The notes beneath the pieces were generated by a model. The model was not told the origin of the DNA. It worked only from the letters and a program-made list of their open reading frames with translations, and made no database searches. Below, one piece after another: positions 19,165-59,806 of a DNA stretch of 64,000 nt. The translations under genes were made by a program, and so were the position numbers. The stretch lies in IMG/VR virus record IMGVR_UViG_3300027541_000009, positions 186,001-250,000 of that record, one strand, 5' to 3'. Numbering within the stretch: the first letter of the stretch is position 1; each line of letters opens with the position of its first letter.

Positions 19165-19482
19165 ATGCTCTCCACTCAATACCGTCTTCGCCTTGAAGCA
19201 ATCTGTGAGCGAATTGTAAAAGGCGAATCTGTAGAGTTAAGCGACATGATTTGGGCAGAGAAGTTGGCAAAAGCAAATCGTTCCGCTGCAACACTTCTAA
19301 GGCAAGCAAGACGCCGTGCTGCAAATCCAGATATGCAAGAAGGAAGTTTAGATGACTTTATGAACGCATTGGATTTGGGTGATCCCGACCCTTCAAATCA
19401 CCGCACTGGATTCAATGGAGCTGATGATATTATTGATTTCTTCACAGGAGACAAACCAGACGATTGGCGACAAAGAGACTGA
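19165..19482 (+). CDS. Hypothetical protein
   Basis: 105-aa ORF with phage-like codon use. Confidence 0.75.
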   Translation: MLSTQYRLRLEAICERIVKGESVELSDMIWAEKLAKANRSAATLLRQARRRAANPDMQEGSLDDFMNALDLGDPDPSNHRTGFNGADDIIDFFTGDKPDDWRQRD

Positions 19483-51968: not shown

Positions 51969-51993
51969 GACCCCACATCAGGGGTCTTTTTTT
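51969..51993 (+). terminator. Rho-independent terminator
   Basis: GACCCC-ACATCA-GGGGTC-T7 between convergent genes. Confidence 0.75.
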
Positions 51994-53005
51994 ATGCTTT
52001 TTCGTACCATCTATAACCATAAGCATTGCACCAAGTTTGCCCATTGTTTATACGTTGAATGTTGTTTTTGATATTAGCAACGCCACTATAATTACCATCA
52101 CCTTTGATAAAGAATGACGCCTCACTCATACTACCAAATTCTACGATTTCGTTGGTTTTAATACTTACACCATAGACAGGTTTCTTTCTTTTTTCGTTGC
52201 TAATTGCAGCAATTTTTTTATAGTGTTCTATTGAATTTGTTTTTGTTGCTGGTGTCCAATCTGTTGGTTTTGATCTAAAGAAATACCAACCTTTTACCTG
52301 TAATTTGCTATTGTCGGGACTGTTAAGTGAGTGATGAATAGCGTGATTATTTGTACGATTTCCTTGTATTTCTTCTGCCGCATCTGCCATTGATTTCCAC
52401 ATCTTTTTACGCCCTAATGTTGGATTGATTCCATATACAGCACCACGAACATTTACTCTCTTTTCTATTACTTTAGGTGTTTCACCTTTCCAAGCCCATC
52501 TATATCCAAGTGCTTGAAATGTCACACCTTTAATGCAAGCAATTATCCCAGTTTTTCCCTTTTTATTTCCACAACTATCAGCAGCAATTCCTACACTCTC
52601 ATAGTCTCTAACCCATTCACCTTCTAATGTATAACAACTCACTGCTTTGGAATGTGGATGATTTGCCCAATACTTTTTTGGTTTCTTTACACCATCACCA
52701 CCTAATGTAATGTTATATCCATTCTTACCACAAGTATCAAGTTTGTTTATCCAAAAGGTTTCACGTTCATTAACATTATCATCGCTACATTCTTCCAATA
52801 CTCTAAACTTAAAGTTATCTGCTCCGTACTTACATATGGCACGAACAATAGGCATAGAGTGAGATGAATTGTTCTCTGCTAAATTATCCTTACTTCTTGC
52901 GTTCTGTAGGTGTTGCTTCCATCTATCATATGGGTTGGGTTGTGTAGTCTTTCCCACATAGAGTTTGCTATTCTCAAGGTTGGTGATTGAGTAGATGTAT
53001 GCCAC
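51992..53005 (-). CDS. GIY-YIG homing endonuclease with NUMOD1-like repeats
   Basis: YIYSITN..N.KLYVGKT..RW.QH..KYG.DNF..LE..RE..WI..GYN; repeated F/Y.S...AA...I...GY.W modules; minus-strand TATAAATA at 53032-53039. Confidence 0.9.
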   Translation of the reverse strand: MAYIYSITNLENSKLYVGKTTQPNPYDRWKQHLQNARSKDNLAENNSSHSMPIVRAICKYGADNFKFRVLEECSDDNVNERETFWINKLDTCGKNGYNITLGGDGVKKPKKYWANHPHSKAVSCYTLEGEWVRDYESVGIAADSCGNKKGKTGIIACIKGVTFQALGYRWAWKGETPKVIEKRVNVRGAVYGINPTLGRKKMWKSMADAAEEIQGNRTNNHAIHHSLNSPDNSKLQVKGWYFFRSKPTDWTPATKTNSIEHYKKIAAISNEKRKKPVYGVSIKTNEIVEFGSMSEASFFIKGDGNYSGVANIKNNIQRINNGQTWCNAYGYRWYEKA

Positions 53006-53065
53006 TGAATTGATGAAAAATGTACTTGCGTTATTTATATTTAAGTGCTGAAATAATGATATTAG

Positions 53066-53129
53066 TTTTCCACAATGTTGTGGAAAAAGTATAATAAATG
53101 TGTGGAAAAACTGTTAGAATTGTGGAAAA
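53066..53129. promoter_or_regulatory. Cluster of four DnaA-box-like 9-mers (TTTTCCACA)
   Basis: TTTTCCACA at 53066 (+) and TGTGGAAAA at 53079, 53101, 53121. Confidence 0.7.
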
Positions 53130-53174
53130 CTTATAGTCATTTAAATGTCTCTGGGGGTCGTTATCTTACAGGTC

Positions 53175-53204
53175 ATTCTATCACACTCGCCCCCAAAATG
53201 TCAA
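53175..53204 (-). promoter_or_regulatory. sigma70-type promoter pointing toward the DnaA boxes
   Basis: Minus strand TTGACA-18 nt-TAGAAT with extended TG. Confidence 0.6.
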
Positions 53205-53277
53205 TACCCCCGCGTTCTCAAATCCCCACAATCCCCCCGCATAAATCCACCGACCCCTGATAAATACCCCCAGACCA

Positions 53278-53306
53278 TTGACAAAAACCGCCCAGCATCT
53301 TATAGT
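53278..53306 (+). promoter_or_regulatory. sigma70-type promoter
   Basis: TTGACA-17 nt-TATAGT. Confidence 0.75.
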
Positions 53307-53333
53307 AGTTTCATAACACACAGGAGCGAACTT

Positions 53334-53507
53334 ATGTCAGTTGCATATCAGCAGGCACAGAAGCAGCGTTATAGGATTACTCTGGATCTATCAGTGTTCG
53401 GTGACTTCGACCCACACCAGATTGATTGGGAGAAGTTATTCAAGTTGGAACCTGCAGAGAAGTGTGATGCTTATGTTGAGGACCTAAGTACACCTGACCG
53501 ATGGTAA
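53334..53507 (+). CDS. Hypothetical protein
   Basis: AGGAG SD; start 53334 within track ORF 53145. Confidence 0.7.
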   Translation: MSVAYQQAQKQRYRITLDLSVFGDFDPHQIDWEKLFKLEPAEKCDAYVEDLSTPDRW

Positions 53508-53588
53508 TTTGGTATCAATTTATACCATATAAGGCGTTTTTATTTTGTTAACATAAAGCATAAATAATCGGGTCTTTATGTTAACAAA

Positions 53589-54624: not shown

Positions 54625-54653
54625 TTGACACTGAGGGGCGTTTATGTTATGAT
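54625..54653 (+). promoter_or_regulatory. Strong sigma70-type promoter with no immediate ORF
   Basis: TTGACA-17 nt-TATGAT with extended TG. Confidence 0.7.
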
Positions 54654-55130
54654 TGGCAGTGATGCTTATCGGCAGTTAATTGCCGCCGATTTGTTATAGC
54701 GCCGCGCGGCGTTGTTATAAGCCCGCCGATGCCCCCCCCCCTTATTAAAAAAAGCAAACTACCCTAACCTACAGAGGTGACAAATCGACCGATAAATATC
54801 AATCTCATAAAAATTTTCCGGAGGTATTTCTAAGTGTTTGGATGGATTCACAAGAACGGTAAGAGTCGCCCCAATAAAAATAAATCAAAAGGTGCAGCAA
54901 GAACTTGTGCTCAAAAGAATGCTGCGAGAAAGCGAAAGAAGAAAAAATGAGAAGGAGAACACCATATTGGAATTTTTGGAGAGTGATACTCGCAGGTTGG
55001 ATAATCAGATATCCAAAAACAATGGGTAGAATTGTATTAATCCCCCTGGGGGTTTTTGTTGTATTGATATATAATGCGTTAGTAAAATAAGTTTTTACTA
55101 AAAAATTTTCCGGAAAAAGTTTAATAAAAA

Positions 55131-57874: not shown

Positions 57875-59806
57875 ATGCCATTAACAAATTTTTCAAATCT
57901 GGATTTTAACCAGATAAAAGCTTCTTTAAGAGACTATTTAAAAGCAAACTCAAATTTCACCGACTATGATTTTGAGGGATCTAATTTATCGTCTATACTT
58001 GATGTTTTAGCATATAACACATATATTACCTCATATAACGCAAACATGGTTGCGAATGAGGTTTTTATTGATAGTGCTACTCTTAGAGAGAATGTTGTTG
58101 CCCTCGCTAGGAATATTGGATATGTTCCTAGGTCAAGAAAAGCAGCAAGAGCTACGGTAAGCTTTTTTATTGATACCTCAAATATCACTCCTGTTCCAGC
58201 ATCAATAACTCTAAAAAAAGGAATTGTAGCAACATCATCAAGTTCTTTTGGAAATCAATCATTTGTTTTTTCAATATTAGATGATGTGACTGTACCAGTA
58301 ATTAATAAAGTAGCAACATTTAATGATTTAAAAATATATGAGGGTGTACTGCTAACAACATCTTTTACTTATTCTTCGAGAAATCCAAATCAAAGATTTA
58401 TATTACCCAATCCTGGCGTAGATACTTCTTTAATCTCAGTATCAGTAAAAGATGACCAGAATTCAACCTCTTTGGTCAATTATTCTTTACAAAATAGTGT
58501 CTTTGATGTAGATAAGGATTCTACTGTCTATTATATCCAAGAAATTGAAGACGAAAGATATGAATTGCTTTTTGGTGATGGTATTTTATATGGCAAAAAA
58601 CTTGAGAATGATAATTTTATAGAAGTTAATTATATTGTATCAAATGGTGATAGTGGAAATGGAGTAAATCAATTTGCTTTTTCCGGAAGATTAACATATA
58701 CCAGAAATTCTGTAGAGTATACAGTAAACTCAGGAATTTCTTTGTTGGCAACTGGGTTAATTTCTTCTGGTGGAGAAAACATAGAAACTGTAGAATCTAT
58801 TAAAAAATATTCAACAAGAATATATGCTTCCCAGAATAGAGCGTTGACTGCTAGTGATTATGAATCATTAATACCTTCAAAGATTTATCCAGAAACGGAA
58901 TCAATATCAGTTTTTGGTGGAGAAGAGTTGATTCCTCCCCAATATGGAAAAGTTTTCATAAGTATTAAACCAAGGACTGGAGATTTTATTCCCAATTTAA
59001 TAAAAGAAAATATTAAAAGAGATTTAAAGAAATACGCAGTGGCAGGAATTGTTCCTGAAATTTTAGATCTTAAGTATCTCTATATTGAGGTAGATTCTAA
59101 AATTTATTATAATACAAATTCCGCACAAGGATCTGATTATGTTTCGAGTATTGTTCAGTCAAATACCAATAAATATGCAGAATCAACCGAATTGAATAAG
59201 TATGGAGCAAGATTTAAATACAGTAAATTTCTTAAGATAATAGATGATAGTCATCCAGCAATAACATCAAACATCACTAAGATTCAAATGAGAAGGGATT
59301 TAAGAGTAGTCTTAAATTCTATAGCAGAATATCAGATTGGATTCGGCAATGCATTCCATATTAAGAGTATGAATGGATACAATGTGAAATCTACAGCATT
59401 TACTATTTCCGGAATACAAGGTTCTGTTTACTTATCGGACATCCCAGATACTAATGGAAATACTGGAAGCATGTTCCTTTTTACTGTACCAAGTGTTAAT
59501 TCCAATGATGCAACTATAGTAAGAAGAAATGTTGGTAGAATTGATTATGTCAAAGGAATAATTACACTCAATCCAATAAATGTTTTATCTACCGATAAAG
59601 TAAAAGATGGACAATCAATCATTGAAATTTCAACTATTCCAAAATCAAATGATGTTATCGGATTACAGGATTTATATTTGCAGCTAGATATTAATAACAG
59701 TATATTTGAAATGATTACTGATCAAATATCATCAGGACTTGATCCATCTGCATCAAATTACATAGTAACTTCAAGCTACAGTAACGGGAATTTAGTAAGA
59801 CAATAA
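57875..59806 (+). CDS. gp6: Baseplate wedge subunit gp6
   Basis: LDF.QIK..L, FTDYDFEGS.LS...DVLAYNTY, FGDG..GKK, QNRA.TA.DY, P.YGKVFISIKP. Confidence 0.95.
   Translation: MPLTNFSNLDFNQIKASLRDYLKANSNFTDYDFEGSNLSSILDVLAYNTYITSYNANMVANEVFIDSATLRENVVALARNIGYVPRSRKAARATVSFFIDTSNITPVPASITLKKGIVATSSSSFGNQSFVFSILDDVTVPVINKVATFNDLKIYEGVLLTTSFTYSSRNPNQRFILPNPGVDTSLISVSVKDDQNSTSLVNYSLQNSVFDVDKDSTVYYIQEIEDERYELLFGDGILYGKKLENDNFIEVNYIVSNGDSGNGVNQFAFSGRLTYTRNSVEYTVNSGISLLATGLISSGGENIETVESIKKYSTRIYASQNRALTASDYESLIPSKIYPETESISVFGGEELIPPQYGKVFISIKPRTGDFIPNLIKENIKRDLKKYAVAGIVPEILDLKYLYIEVDSKIYYNTNSAQGSDYVSSIVQSNTNKYAESTELNKYGARFKYSKFLKIIDDSHPAITSNITKIQMRRDLRVVLNSIAEYQIGFGNAFHIKSMNGYNVKSTAFTISGIQGSVYLSDIPDTNGNTGSMFLFTVPSVNSNDATIVRRNVGRIDYVKGIITLNPINVLSTDKVKDGQSIIEISTIPKSNDVIGLQDLYLQLDINNSIFEMITDQISSGLDPSASNYIVTSSYSNGNLVRQ

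What the first reader, a model, noticed from the sequence alone, without database searches (positions are those of the whole stretch)
53149..53306. G-tract cluster between divergent promoters next to the DnaA boxes (G4/R-loop-prone candidate origin element)
Seen in sequence: six C-runs of 4-6 nt on the + strand (53190, 53207, 53224, 53233, 53254, 53267), hence G-tracts on the minus strand, within about 82 bp of an AT-rich genome. They are enclosed by an inverted repeat TCTGGGGGT...ACCCCCAGA (about 53150 and 53266). A leftward promoter (53175-53204) fires into the DnaA boxes and a rightward one lies at 53278. Inference: G-quadruplex or R-loop formation may assist origin opening or priming, or mark a packaging or recombination site.
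Basis: partly seen in the sequence, partly recalled or inferred. Interest (0 to 1): 0.6.

Follow-up and report, generated by a model that had tools for sequence, protein, structure and literature searches.

The report
C-run spacer between back-to-back phage promoters
The cluster of C-runs is real. It is the conserved 73-bp spacer between two back-to-back promoters in a cyanophage control region that also carries host-type DnaA boxes, but the evidence favours ordinary double-stranded promoter architecture over a G-quadruplex or R-loop device.

Summary
Six C-runs of 4-6 nt lie at 53190-53271. The whole 204.8-kb phage genome has only 137 such runs, and this is the only cluster of them.

The window is a T4-like cyanomyovirus (Kyanoviridae). 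The runs fill the 73 bp between the -35 hexamers of two near-consensus sigma70-type promoters. P_L (53204->53175) is the only strong leftward promoter in the genome. P_R (53278->53306) drives a conserved 57-aa gene. Four perfect cyanobacterial DnaA boxes (TTTTCCACA) lie just downstream of P_L.

The spacer is conserved in at least 119 metagenomic relatives, always upstream of the same gene. It is 76-80 nt long by a slightly wider measure, with about 41% C and 10% G. Its invariant parts are A/T islands, not the runs: AAATCCNCACA, and ATAAATA, the cyanophage late-promoter core.

Evidence against a selected G-quadruplex or R-loop role:
- No relative has a canonical G4 motif.
- The flanking inverted repeat is not conserved.
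- No base-paired structure is conserved on either strand.
- Neither promoter transcribes the tract into G-rich RNA.
- The equivalent spacers of S-SM2 and Bellamy have the same length but no C-runs.

Best reading: a duplex promoter spacer inside a family-wide noncoding hub that is a plausible, untested replication origin. G4 formation is physically possible (G4Hunter 1.5-1.9) but there is no sign that selection acts on it.

The parts
51969..51986 (+). Intrinsic terminator hairpin of the upstream rightward gene (followed by TTTTTTTATG). It marks the left border of the noncoding hub in relatives.
   Evidence: The same terminator plus 'TTTTTTTATG' is seen in relatives.
51992..53005 (-). GIY-YIG homing endonuclease ORF (337 aa, GTG start), inserted between the terminator and the hub. 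It is absent from most relatives and is not part of the C-run element.
   Evidence: Pfam PF01541 2e-14. PHROG homing endonuclease families. Found in 35 of 205 fetched loci at 29-100% identity.
53032..53039 (-). TATAAATA on the minus strand, a late-promoter-like core 26 nt upstream of the endonuclease start. It belongs to the endonuclease cassette.
   Evidence: It is one of only 6 minus-strand ATAAATA sites against 54 on the plus strand.
53066..53129 (.). Four perfect cyanobacterial DnaA boxes: TTTTCCACA at 53066-74, and TGTGGAAAA at 53079-87, 53101-09 and 53121-29. They lie at about +39 to +102 of the P_L transcript.
   Evidence: The consensus is from PMC4674748. Homologous clusters occur in S-SM2, S-PM2, Syn9 and S-SCSM1.
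53130..53165 (+). Single copy of the 'unit' (CTTATAGTCATTTAAATGTCTCTGGGGGTCGTTATC), with a late-promoter-like TTTAAATG at 53140-47. Relatives carry 1-5 tandem copies. It is part of the block TAAATGTG..GT.GTGATCTTAGCG.GCA, recognisable in all seven lineages aligned.
53150..53158 (.). Left arm of the inverted repeat (TCTGGGGGT).
   Evidence: Not conserved.
53175..53204 (-). P_L: leftward sigma70-type promoter TTGACA-N18-(TG)TAGAAT, with an inferred start near 53168. C-run 1 (53190-94) is its spacer.
   Evidence: It is the only minus-strand site among 42 sites scoring 11/12 or better in the genome. It is conserved in the window clade and in four cultured relatives; the hexamer was not found in Syn9.
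53205..53277 (.). The 73-bp spacer between the two -35 hexamers (C 48%, G 8% on the + strand). It holds C-runs 2-6 and three A/T islands.
53220..53230 (+). Near-invariant AAATCCNCACA (0.95-1.00 identity except at N), about 52-62 bp upstream of the P_L start. It includes C-run 3.
   Evidence: Not enriched elsewhere in the genome.
53241..53247 (+). Middle A/T island ATAAATC (moderately conserved, 0.59-0.96).
53260..53266 (+). Near-invariant ATAAATA (identity 0.98-1.00 at every position across 56 sequences), which is the cyanophage late-promoter core NATAAATA. It lies 11 bp upstream of the P_R -35 hexamer. C-run 6 follows it.
   Evidence: NATAAATA is from PMC2984593. Strand bias 54 vs 6.
53266..53274 (.). 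Right arm of the inverted repeat (ACCCCCAGA).
53278..53306 (+). P_R: rightward sigma70-type promoter TTGACA-N17-TATAGT, with an inferred start near 53313.
   Evidence: TTGACA is invariant in relatives.
53334..53507 (+). Conserved 57-aa acidic protein of unknown function (phrog_12516), with an AGGAG ribosome-binding site at 53322-26. It is the gene always found downstream of the spacer.

Best explanation
The C-runs are the shared upstream spacer of a back-to-back promoter pair. This spacer sits in a unique, conserved noncoding control hub of T4-like cyanophages and most likely acts as ordinary double-stranded DNA.

Shown:
- The tract lies exactly between the -35 hexamers of P_L and P_R.
- P_L is the only strong leftward sigma70-type promoter in the genome. 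It fires through four host-type DnaA boxes.
- P_R drives a conserved 57-aa gene.
- The spacer's length, its C-rich/G-poor composition and three A/T islands are conserved in one large clade.
- The best-conserved positions are AAATCCNCACA (52-62 bp upstream of the P_L start) and ATAAATA (the cyanophage late-promoter core, 11 bp upstream of the P_R -35).

Inferred:
- ATAAATA is a gp55-type late promoter stacked on the early promoter P_R. This is the early-plus-late arrangement proposed for 'middle-like' expression in phages that lack MotA/AsiA.
- The A/T islands serve as UP-like or factor-binding sites for the two promoters.
- The G·C blocks act as stiff, melting-resistant separators. They would fix the geometry of the two promoters and confine opening to the promoters and the AT-rich DNA on the left.

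The hub as a whole consists of AT-rich ATTAAAAAT repeats, DnaA boxes or alternative palindromic boxes, tandem TATAAATG units, and P_L pointing into them. It is a credible candidate for a replication origin or a master control region, but that is not shown. G4 or i-motif formation in the spacer is physically possible, but the comparative data do not indicate that it is the selected property.
For: Position between two 11/12 promoters. P_L is the only minus-strand site among 42 strong promoter-like sites, and no other promoter has a C-rich upstream region (C 0.09-0.28 against 0.45).

Conservation: 56 distinct upstream sequences have a 76-80 nt spacer (measured from the GTCAA of the leftward -35 to TTGACA) with C 41%, G 10% and A 34%. 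The pattern AAATCCNCACA-N26-34-ATAAATA-N9-14-TTGACA occurs once each in at least 119 IMG/VR contigs. In all 115 with enough downstream sequence to test, the same 57-aa gene follows.

Invariance sits in the A/T islands and promoter hexamers, not in the runs. ATAAATA has a 54:6 strand bias in the genome, as expected of late promoters. NATAAATA and overlapping early/late promoters are described for S-PM2 and Syn9 (PMC2984593).

No conserved base-paired structure on either strand. No Rfam or tRNA hit.

The spacer length (73-76 bp) is kept in S-SM2, SynMITS9220M01 and Bellamy, even though their composition differs.

The hub architecture recurs in Syn9, S-PM2, S-SM2 and S-SCSM1.
Against: The roles of the A/T islands and the G·C blocks are therefore inferred from position and conservation only.

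Other late promoters in this genome are followed by A/T-rich sequence, not C-runs, and no other early promoter has such an upstream region. 'Generic promoter architecture' therefore does not explain why this spacer is C-rich.

The Cs are clustered into runs beyond what composition predicts: 3.2 against 1.3 C4+ runs. G4Hunter is at or below -1.5 in 40 of 56 relatives. This leaves room for a structure-based or run-specific function.

AAATCCNCACA is unique in the genome, so no regulon supports a transcription-factor reading.
Confidence: 0.5

Rival explanations
1. Supercoil-driven G-quadruplex/i-motif switch. Divergent transcription from P_L and P_R over-winds the DNA ahead of the polymerases and under-winds the spacer behind them. 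The G-rich minus strand then folds into a long-loop G4 (with the C-rich strand as an i-motif). This would tune the two promoters or hold the adjacent origin-like DNA open.
For: Top G4Hunter region of the genome. ViennaRNA with G-quadruplex energies predicts a four-layer G4 from runs 4, 3, 2 and 1 (-21.7 vs -15.7 kcal/mol for the single strand, RNA parameters). 44 of 56 relatives keep four or more C3+ runs, and runs exceed the composition expectation. The tract sits exactly where divergent transcription would concentrate negative supercoiling (twin-domain model, established knowledge).
Against: No canonical motif in 0 of 56 relatives; loops of 12 nt or less in only 4 of 56. The putative loops are more conserved than the runs. 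Run 3 is broken (TCCTCAC or TCCACAC) in 22 of 56 relatives, and run 1 is kept in 15 of 56. 12 of 56 relatives have fewer than four C3+ runs. The homologous spacers in S-SM2 and Bellamy have none, and those in Syn9 and S-PM2 have 2-3. Energies are for free single strands, not duplex DNA.
Confidence: 0.15
2. Array of sequence-specific protein-binding sites. The ~20-24-nt direct repeats (A/T island followed by C-run: CACAAAATCCCCAC, GCATAAATCCACC, TGATAAATACCCCC) bind a host or phage DNA-binding protein. One candidate is low-affinity DnaA binding at the CCACA cores, which would cooperate with the four strong boxes downstream of P_L.
For: AAATCCNCACA is nearly invariant and its one free position coincides with the N of the DnaA consensus TTWTNCACA. 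On the minus strand it reads TGTGGGGAT, matching TGTGGAAAA at 6 of 9 positions. Many relatives have AAATCCACA in the middle island, matching TTWTNCACA at 7 of 9. Two relatives carry an extra ~21-nt unit of the same kind (L016, L054), as iteron arrays do. The element is unique in the genome, like an origin or operator site.
Against: The matches to the DnaA box are weak. The module is equally conserved in relatives whose strong boxes are not DnaA boxes but TGATAAT- or TGAGAAT-type palindromes. No binding protein is identified. There is no binding data.
Confidence: 0.22
3. R-loop or primer element of a replication origin. A G-rich transcript through the tract would form a stable RNA-DNA hybrid, possibly with G4 help, that primes or opens the origin, as in ColE1, mitochondrial CSBII or T4 oriF/oriG.
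For: The context is origin-like: DnaA boxes, AT-rich repeats in relatives, and a unique promoter directed into them. T4 origins use promoter-derived R-loops (established knowledge).
Against: G-rich RNA requires leftward transcription across 53272->53190. The only promoter-like sites to the right are weak (9/12, at 53551 and 53584). P_L starts at about 53168, beyond the runs, and its RNA is A/U-rich with C exceeding G. Rightward read-through gives C-rich RNA, which disfavours R-loops. There is no GC-skew inflection.
Confidence: 0.05
4. No function of its own: a lineage-specific compositional quirk of a spacer whose only constrained features are its length and the promoter elements.
For: Sister genera keep the spacer length (75-76 bp) with ordinary composition and no C-runs. 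Run columns are no more conserved than other columns.
Against: C 41% / G 10% and C4+ runs persist across 56 distinct sequences whose flanks and upstream cassettes vary widely. A C-over-G bias also appears in the non-alignable equivalents of Syn9 and S-PM2. It is a GC-rich island (56% G+C in the 73-bp spacer) in a 37% GC genome.
Confidence: 0.08

Closest known systems
Overlapping early (sigma70-type) and late (gp55, NATAAATA) promoters of MotA-less T4-like phages (RB49, S-PM2, Syn9)
   Same: A near-consensus TTGACA-17-TATAGT promoter with a near-invariant ATAAATA core immediately upstream, in front of a small conserved gene. This arrangement is described for cyanomyoviruses in PMC2984593.
   Different: Here the pair is fused back-to-back with a unique leftward promoter, and the DNA between them is a C-run-rich island not seen at any other promoter in the genome.
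Promoter-upstream G-quadruplexes (c-MYC NHE III1 type; Neisseria pilE G4 with its adjacent small-RNA promoter)
   Same: A G-rich strand upstream of a promoter, in DNA expected to be negatively supercoiled. High G4Hunter score.
   Different: Loops of 12-15 nt instead of 7 or fewer. Runs are not preferentially conserved. No promoter transcribes through the G-rich non-template strand, as the pilE small-RNA promoter does.
R-loop-primed origins (T4 oriF/oriG; ColE1 RNA II; mitochondrial CSBII)
   Same: A promoter (P_L) pointing into AT-rich, initiator-box-bearing DNA. A G/C-asymmetric tract lies nearby.
   Different: The G-rich strand is not the RNA-like strand of any mapped promoter, and the tract lies behind P_L, not downstream of it.
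DnaA-box origins (bacterial oriC; P1 oriR and plasmid origins that recruit host DnaA)
   Same: A cluster of perfect host-consensus boxes next to AT-rich direct repeats (ATTAAAAAT x2 in relatives).
   Different: It lies in a T4-like phage, a group known for origin R-loops and recombination-dependent replication rather than for using DnaA. The boxes are swapped for unrelated palindromes in sister lineages. There is no skew inflection. In the window, a homing endonuclease has replaced part of the AT-rich DNA.
Rho-utilisation (rut) sites
   Same: About 80 nt, C-rich and G-poor, and essentially unstructured as + strand RNA (-1.5 kcal/mol for 96 nt).
   Different: Cyanobacteria lack Rho (my own knowledge, not tested here), and the phage record encodes no Rho RNA-binding domain.

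Membership tests
Canonical G-quadruplex motif | Four runs of three or more G separated by loops of 1-7 nt | tested here: not met
   No match in the window tract. Loops of 12-15 nt are needed. 0 of 56 relatives match with loops of 7 or fewer, and 4 of 56 with loops of 12 or fewer.
G4-prone sequence by G4Hunter | Absolute score of about 1.5 or more in a 25-nt window | tested here: met
   -1.88 (W25), -1.66 (W50) and -1.45 (W80), the top of the genome for windows of 50 nt or more. 40 of 56 relatives score at or below -1.5.
Functional (selected) G4 | G-runs conserved more than loops, and run number maintained in homologues | tested here: not met
   Run columns 0.785 vs non-run columns 0.777. The invariant positions are A/T islands. 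Runs 1 and 3 are often broken. S-SM2 and Bellamy have 0 runs; Syn9 and S-PM2 have 2-3.
G4 folding in vitro or in vivo | K+-dependent folding (CD, DMS, BG4) | not testable with these tools
   Only an energy-model prediction for a free single strand is available.
R-loop-forming element | G-rich RNA-like (non-template) strand downstream of an active promoter | tested here: not met
   P_L and P_R both transcribe away from the tract. Leftward promoter-like sites to the right are weak at 9/12. P_L RNA is not G-rich.
Sigma70-type divergent promoter pair | Two -35/-10 pairs with 16-18 nt spacers on opposite strands, conserved in relatives | tested here: met
   11/12 each. Conserved in 56 clade sequences and in S-SM2, Bellamy, SynMITS9220M01 and S-SCSM1. 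Activity was not measured.
T4-type late promoter | NATAAATA core on the coding strand upstream of a gene | tested here: met
   GATAAATA at 53259-66. The ATAAATA core is 0.98-1.00 conserved at every position. 54:6 strand bias in the genome. The consensus is from PMC2984593. Use by gp55 was not tested.
DnaA-dependent origin (oriC-like) | Cluster of consensus DnaA boxes | tested here: met
   Four perfect TTTTCCACA boxes in 64 bp, the only cluster in the genome. This is the cyanobacterial consensus.
DnaA-dependent origin (oriC-like) | Adjacent AT-rich unwinding element with repeats | tested here: inconclusive
   Relatives have AT-rich DNA with ATTAAAAAT x2 next to the boxes. In the window, much of it is replaced by the endonuclease insertion. 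Unwinding was not tested.
DnaA-dependent origin (oriC-like) | Strand-composition (GC skew) switch at the site | tested here: not met
   Cumulative skew rises monotonically across the genome, with only a local dip at the minus-strand endonuclease gene. The test is weak in a phage whose genes nearly all lie on one strand.
DnaA-dependent origin (oriC-like) | Replication initiates here; DnaA binds | not testable with these tools
There is no binding assay.
Structured noncoding RNA | Conserved base-paired structure with covariation, or an Rfam match | tested here: not met
   Rfam gave 0 hits at E <= 1. RNAalifold gave 0 pairs on the + strand and 3 trivial pairs on the - strand. Fold z-scores were -0.58 and -1.1.

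The most novel reading that the evidence does not exclude
The hub around 53010-53310 is the primary replication origin of many cyanomyoviruses. It would recruit the host initiator DnaA, or another box-binding factor in sister lineages, downstream of the genome's only leftward early promoter. The G-tract spacer between the divergent promoters would fold into a supercoil-driven G4/i-motif that helps keep the origin open or gates its firing.
Probability: 0.1. Interest if true: 0.85.

Novelty: new variant of a known kind. Interest (0 to 1): 0.5.

Why it matters
The replication origins and early regulatory circuitry of T4-like cyanophages are essentially unmapped; a review reports only a single predicted theta origin for Syn9 (PMC2984593). 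These phages are among the most abundant viruses in the ocean.

This locus gives a concrete, testable candidate: a unique noncoding hub present in at least five cultured lineages and more than 100 metagenomic relatives. It has perfect host DnaA boxes, the only antisense-oriented strong promoter in the genome, and an unusual C-run spacer.

If the hub is an origin or a master switch, it would show that a T4-like phage plugs into the host initiator. The swap of DnaA boxes for other palindromes in sister lineages would then point to modular exchange of host-factor dependence. The C-run tract alone is probably promoter architecture and of modest interest.

Tried and rejected
1. Part of the homing-endonuclease cassette: rejected. 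Relatives without the endonuclease (L008, L021, L028-L030, L049) carry five C4+ runs.
2. Structured RNA or tRNA: rejected. No Rfam hit, no ARAGORN hit, no consensus structure on either strand.
3. Hairpin or cruciform from the TCTGGGGGT/ACCCCCAGA repeat: rejected. It is complete in only 2 of 56 relatives, repeat lengths equal shuffled controls, and the fold z-score is -0.58.
4. Coding sequence (ORFs 53075-53260, 53145-53507, 53181-53321): rejected. Spacer lengths differ among relatives by non-multiples of three, 75-81 nt.
5. General promoter-class motif: rejected. C-rich upstream DNA occurs at none of the other 40 strong promoters. C-runs follow none of the other 53 ATAAATA sites. AAATCCNCACA is not enriched.
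6. rut site: rejected. There is no Rho in the phage record, and the hosts lack Rho (my own knowledge).
7. GC-skew origin signal: none found.
8. Mutational strand bias alone: it would explain low G and high A on the + strand, but not 41-48% C in a 37% GC genome (inference).
10. Literature: no held paper links cyanophages with DnaA boxes or G-quadruplexes. The Syn9 (Weigele 2007), S-PM2 (Mann 2005) and Syn9-transcriptome (Doron 2016) papers were not held. I therefore could not check whether Syn9's predicted origin is this hub.
11. Calling the TGATAAT/TGAGAAT palindromes of sister lineages Fur/Zur boxes: the papers read give only logos and a '7-1-7 palindrome' statement. The resemblance remains a lead from memory of the E. 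coli Fur consensus.
Full report
WHAT THE WINDOW IS

The region's nearest relatives in the phage collection are T4-like cyanomyoviruses (Kyanoviridae): S-SM2, Bellamy, S-CREM1 and ACG-2014d, matching at 69-80% identity over short stretches. The genome held for the window is a 204,829-bp IMG/VR virus record. It is linear, CheckV rates it 78% complete, and its GC content is 36.7%.

The finding lies in the 328-bp gap between two genes. On the left is a minus-strand GIY-YIG homing endonuclease ORF (51992-53005; Pfam PF01541, 2e-14). On the right is a plus-strand 57-aa gene (53334-53507; phrog_12516, function unknown).

THE OBSERVATION

- The six C-runs are at 53190, 53207, 53224, 53233, 53254 and 53267.
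- The genome has only 137 C-runs of 4 or more. No other place has 4 or more of them in 100 bp.
- This is the top G4Hunter region of the genome for windows of 50-100 nt.
- The Cs are clustered into runs beyond what composition gives.
- The inverted repeat exists, and ACCCCCAGA occurs only at its two arms in the genome.
- The 'DnaA boxes' are four perfect copies of TTTTCCACA in 64 bp. They are the only cluster of TTWTNCACA sites in the genome.
- TTTTCCACA is the 'species-specific' DnaA box of cyanobacteria (PMC4674748).

WHERE THE TRACT SITS

Run 1 is the spacer of the leftward promoter P_L (TTGACA 53204->53199, TAGAAT 53180->53175). Runs 2-6 fill the 73 bp between the -35 hexamer of P_L and that of the rightward promoter P_R (TTGACA 53278-83, TATAGT 53301-06).

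Of 42 sites in the genome that match the sigma70 consensus at 11/12 or better, 41 point rightward like the genes. P_L is the only one that points leftward. None of the others has a C-rich upstream region.

P_L transcribes away from the tract, through the DnaA boxes (about +39 to +102), towards the endonuclease gene. P_R transcribes away from it into the 57-aa gene.

RELATIVES

The 57-aa protein retrieved 80 IMG/VR loci at 88-100% amino-acid identity. They give 56 distinct 200-nt upstream sequences.
- The spacer between the two -35 elements, measured there from the GTCAA of the leftward hexamer to TTGACA, is 76-80 nt in nearly all. Two relatives have an extra ~21-nt unit.
- Its composition is C 41%, A 34%, T 14%, G 10%.
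- In all 115 contigs with enough downstream DNA to test, the same small gene follows.

The element is therefore a conserved, single-copy cis module tied to this promoter pair. It is not part of the endonuclease cassette. Only 35 of 205 loci carry such an endonuclease, and endonuclease-free relatives have the runs.

WHAT IS CONSERVED

Column by column, the invariant positions are A53220-A53230 (AAATCCNCACA), A53260-A53266 (ATAAATA, 0.98-1.00 at every position) and the TTGACA hexamer. Run columns average 0.785 identity and non-run columns 0.777.

Retention of each run as three or more Cs, out of 56 relatives:

| Run | Kept as C3+ |
|---|---|
| 1 | 15 |
| 2 | 47 |
| 3 | 34 |
| 4 | 49 |
| 5 | 35 |
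| 6 | 49 |

The common variants TCCTCAC and TCCACAC break run 3.

ATAAATA is the core of the cyanophage late promoter NATAAATA (PMC2984593). In this genome it occurs 54 times on the gene strand and 6 times on the other. A late promoter stacked on an early one is the arrangement proposed for 'middle-like' expression in S-PM2, Syn9 and RB49.

The A/T islands lie about 47-62 bp upstream of the inferred starts of the two promoters. That is where UP elements or class I activators act (inference from position).

TESTS OF THE G4 / R-LOOP READING

For:
- G4Hunter is -1.88, -1.66 and -1.45 at 25, 50 and 80 nt.
- ViennaRNA with G-quadruplex energies predicts a four-layer G4 from runs 4, 3, 2 and 1 on the free minus strand.
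- 44 of 56 relatives keep four or more C3+ runs.

Against:
- No canonical motif (loops of 7 or fewer) exists in the window or in any relative. Loops of 12 or fewer occur in 4 of 56.
- The would-be loops are at least as conserved as the runs.
- The enclosing inverted repeat is complete only in the window and one other sequence, and repeat lengths equal shuffled controls.
- Single-strand folds are no better than shuffles.
- RNAalifold finds no consensus structure on either strand.
- Rfam and ARAGORN find nothing.
- For a G-rich-RNA R-loop, the tract would have to be transcribed leftward. No credible promoter does that. The P_L RNA is A/U-rich with more C than G.
- The homologous spacers of cultured phages keep the length but not the runs:

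| Phage | Spacer (bp) | C | G | C3+ runs |
|---|---|---|---|---|
| S-SM2 | 75 | 17% | 24% | 0 |
| Bellamy | 76 | 14% | 25% | 0 |
| SynMITS9220M01 | 75 | 29% | 16% | 3 |
| Syn9 (equivalent stretch) | 57 | 39% | 9% | 3 |
| S-PM2 (equivalent stretch) | 53 | 38% | 17% | 2 |

Four G-tracts are therefore not a requirement of this control region. A bias of C over G on the plus strand is more widespread than the tracts themselves.

THE SURROUNDINGS: A FAMILY-WIDE NONCODING HUB

In relatives without the endonuclease, the DNA runs in this order, left to right:
1. the terminator of the upstream gene;
2. AT-rich DNA with two ATTAAAAAT repeats;
3. a box module;
4. 1-5 tandem ~33-nt units, each with TATAAATG;
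5. P_L;
6. the C-rich spacer;
7. P_R.

The box module comes in mutually exclusive kinds among 93 distinct sequences: DnaA boxes (24), TGAGAAT/ATTCTCA palindromes (21), TGATAAT/ATTATCA palindromes (16), and unclassified (32). They are never mixed.

DnaA-box clusters with the same palindrome-plus-direct-repeat layout occur in S-PM2 (19231-19264), Syn9 (52565-52597) and S-SM2, and a looser pair of one exact and one near box in S-SCSM1. In all of them the neighbouring block TAAATGTG..GT.GTGATCTTAGCG.GCA is present, and in S-SM2, S-PM2 and S-SCSM1 so is the ATTAAAAAT-type AT-rich DNA.

In the deposited records these stretches are annotated as tiny ORFs (Syn9 gp86/87) or as tRNAs (S-PM2). ARAGORN does not support the tRNAs.

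I found no paper in the held library that links cyanophages with DnaA boxes. A review notes only that a single theta origin was predicted for Syn9. The primary paper was not available, so I could not check whether that prediction is this hub.

Cumulative GC skew gives no origin signal. That test is weak in a genome transcribed almost wholly in one direction.

CONCLUSION

The C-run cluster is real, non-random and conserved in a large clade. Its position, its conservation pattern and the comparison with sister genera fit a double-stranded promoter spacer best. It appears to be a shared upstream region carrying a late promoter and A/T-island sites for two back-to-back early promoters, with G·C blocks between them (confidence about 0.5).

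The rivals are:
- an array of specific protein sites, possibly degenerate DnaA sites (0.22);
- a supercoil-driven long-loop G4/i-motif (0.15);
- a neutral compositional quirk (0.08);
- an R-loop element (0.05).

The more interesting object is the hub as a whole. It is a credible but untested candidate for a cyanomyovirus origin or master control region that engages host DnaA.

LIMITS

No transcript, binding, folding or replication data could be obtained. Relatives are phylogenetically related, so counts across them describe the clade and are not independent tests.

Noticed in passing
window 51992-53045 (-): A free-standing GIY-YIG homing endonuclease (337 aa, GTG start, no obvious ribosome-binding site) has its own minus-strand TATAAATA at 53039->53032. 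It is inserted between the upstream terminator and the hub and replaces about 50 nt of the AT-rich DNA seen in relatives. Different GIY-YIG lineages (29-100% identity) occupy the same site in 35 of 205 related loci, so this is an insertion hot spot.
   Followed up: partly
window 53066-53129; relatives L003-L205; S-PM2 19231-19264; Syn9 52565-52597; S-SM2 58064-58093: Perfect cyanobacterial DnaA boxes (TTTTCCACA) are clustered in a T4-like phage. They are replaced at the same position in sister lineages by TGATAAT/ATTATCA or TGAGAAT/ATTCTCA palindromes. These resemble Fur-family 7-1-7 boxes (resemblance from memory only). The kinds are never mixed (24, 16 and 21 of 93 sequences).
   Followed up: partly
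relatives, about 150-330 nt upstream of the 57-aa gene (e.g. L052:2180-2300, L064, L017): There are 1-5 tandem ~33-nt units, each carrying TATAAATG (late-promoter-like). The window has one copy (53130-53165). Copy number varies between close relatives.
   Followed up: partly
IMG/VR loci: Contigs end within 2.5 kb upstream of the 57-aa gene far more often (38 of 80, 22 of them within 700 nt) than within 2.5 kb downstream (6 of 80). This suggests that assemblies break in the hypervariable hub.
   Followed up: no
S-PM2 record AJ630128, 18856-19333 (L210:57-534): The annotated tRNA-Met, tRNA-Asn and tRNA-Leu overlap the DnaA-box region but are not found by ARAGORN. Syn9 gp86/gp87 are tiny ORFs annotated over the homologous noncoding hub. 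Both are probably annotation artefacts.
   Followed up: partly
window 54700-54741: The next intergenic region holds a GC-rich palindrome (CGCCGCGCGGCG, 54700-11) and a C10 homopolymer (54732-41). This is the genome's highest 25-nt G4Hunter window (2.0). It lies just after a TTGACA-17-TATGAT promoter at 54625 and before a GATAAATA at 54791.
   Followed up: no
window 53541-53583: A near-perfect palindrome, TTGTTAACATAAAG ... CTTTATGTTAACAA, lies in the gap after the 57-aa gene, with an ATAAATA at 53560 in its loop. It could be a terminator, an operator or a hairpin.
   Followed up: no
window 53334-53507 (+): The 57-aa acidic protein (phrog_12516) is very strongly conserved (88-100% in 80 loci). 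It is present in only some Kyanoviridae: Bellamy, S-SM2, SynMITS9220M01, S-B05, S-SCSM1, P-TIM68 and S-SRM01. In S-B05 and P-TIM68 it lacks the hub upstream.
   Followed up: partly
G000 / L004: The window's genome record is rated 78% complete. Over the 5.2 kb fetched around the 57-aa gene, a 284,050-bp IMG/VR contig (3300027541_000009) carries the same 200-nt upstream sequence and identical 57-aa and endonuclease proteins. The true genome may therefore be larger than 205 kb.
   Followed up: no
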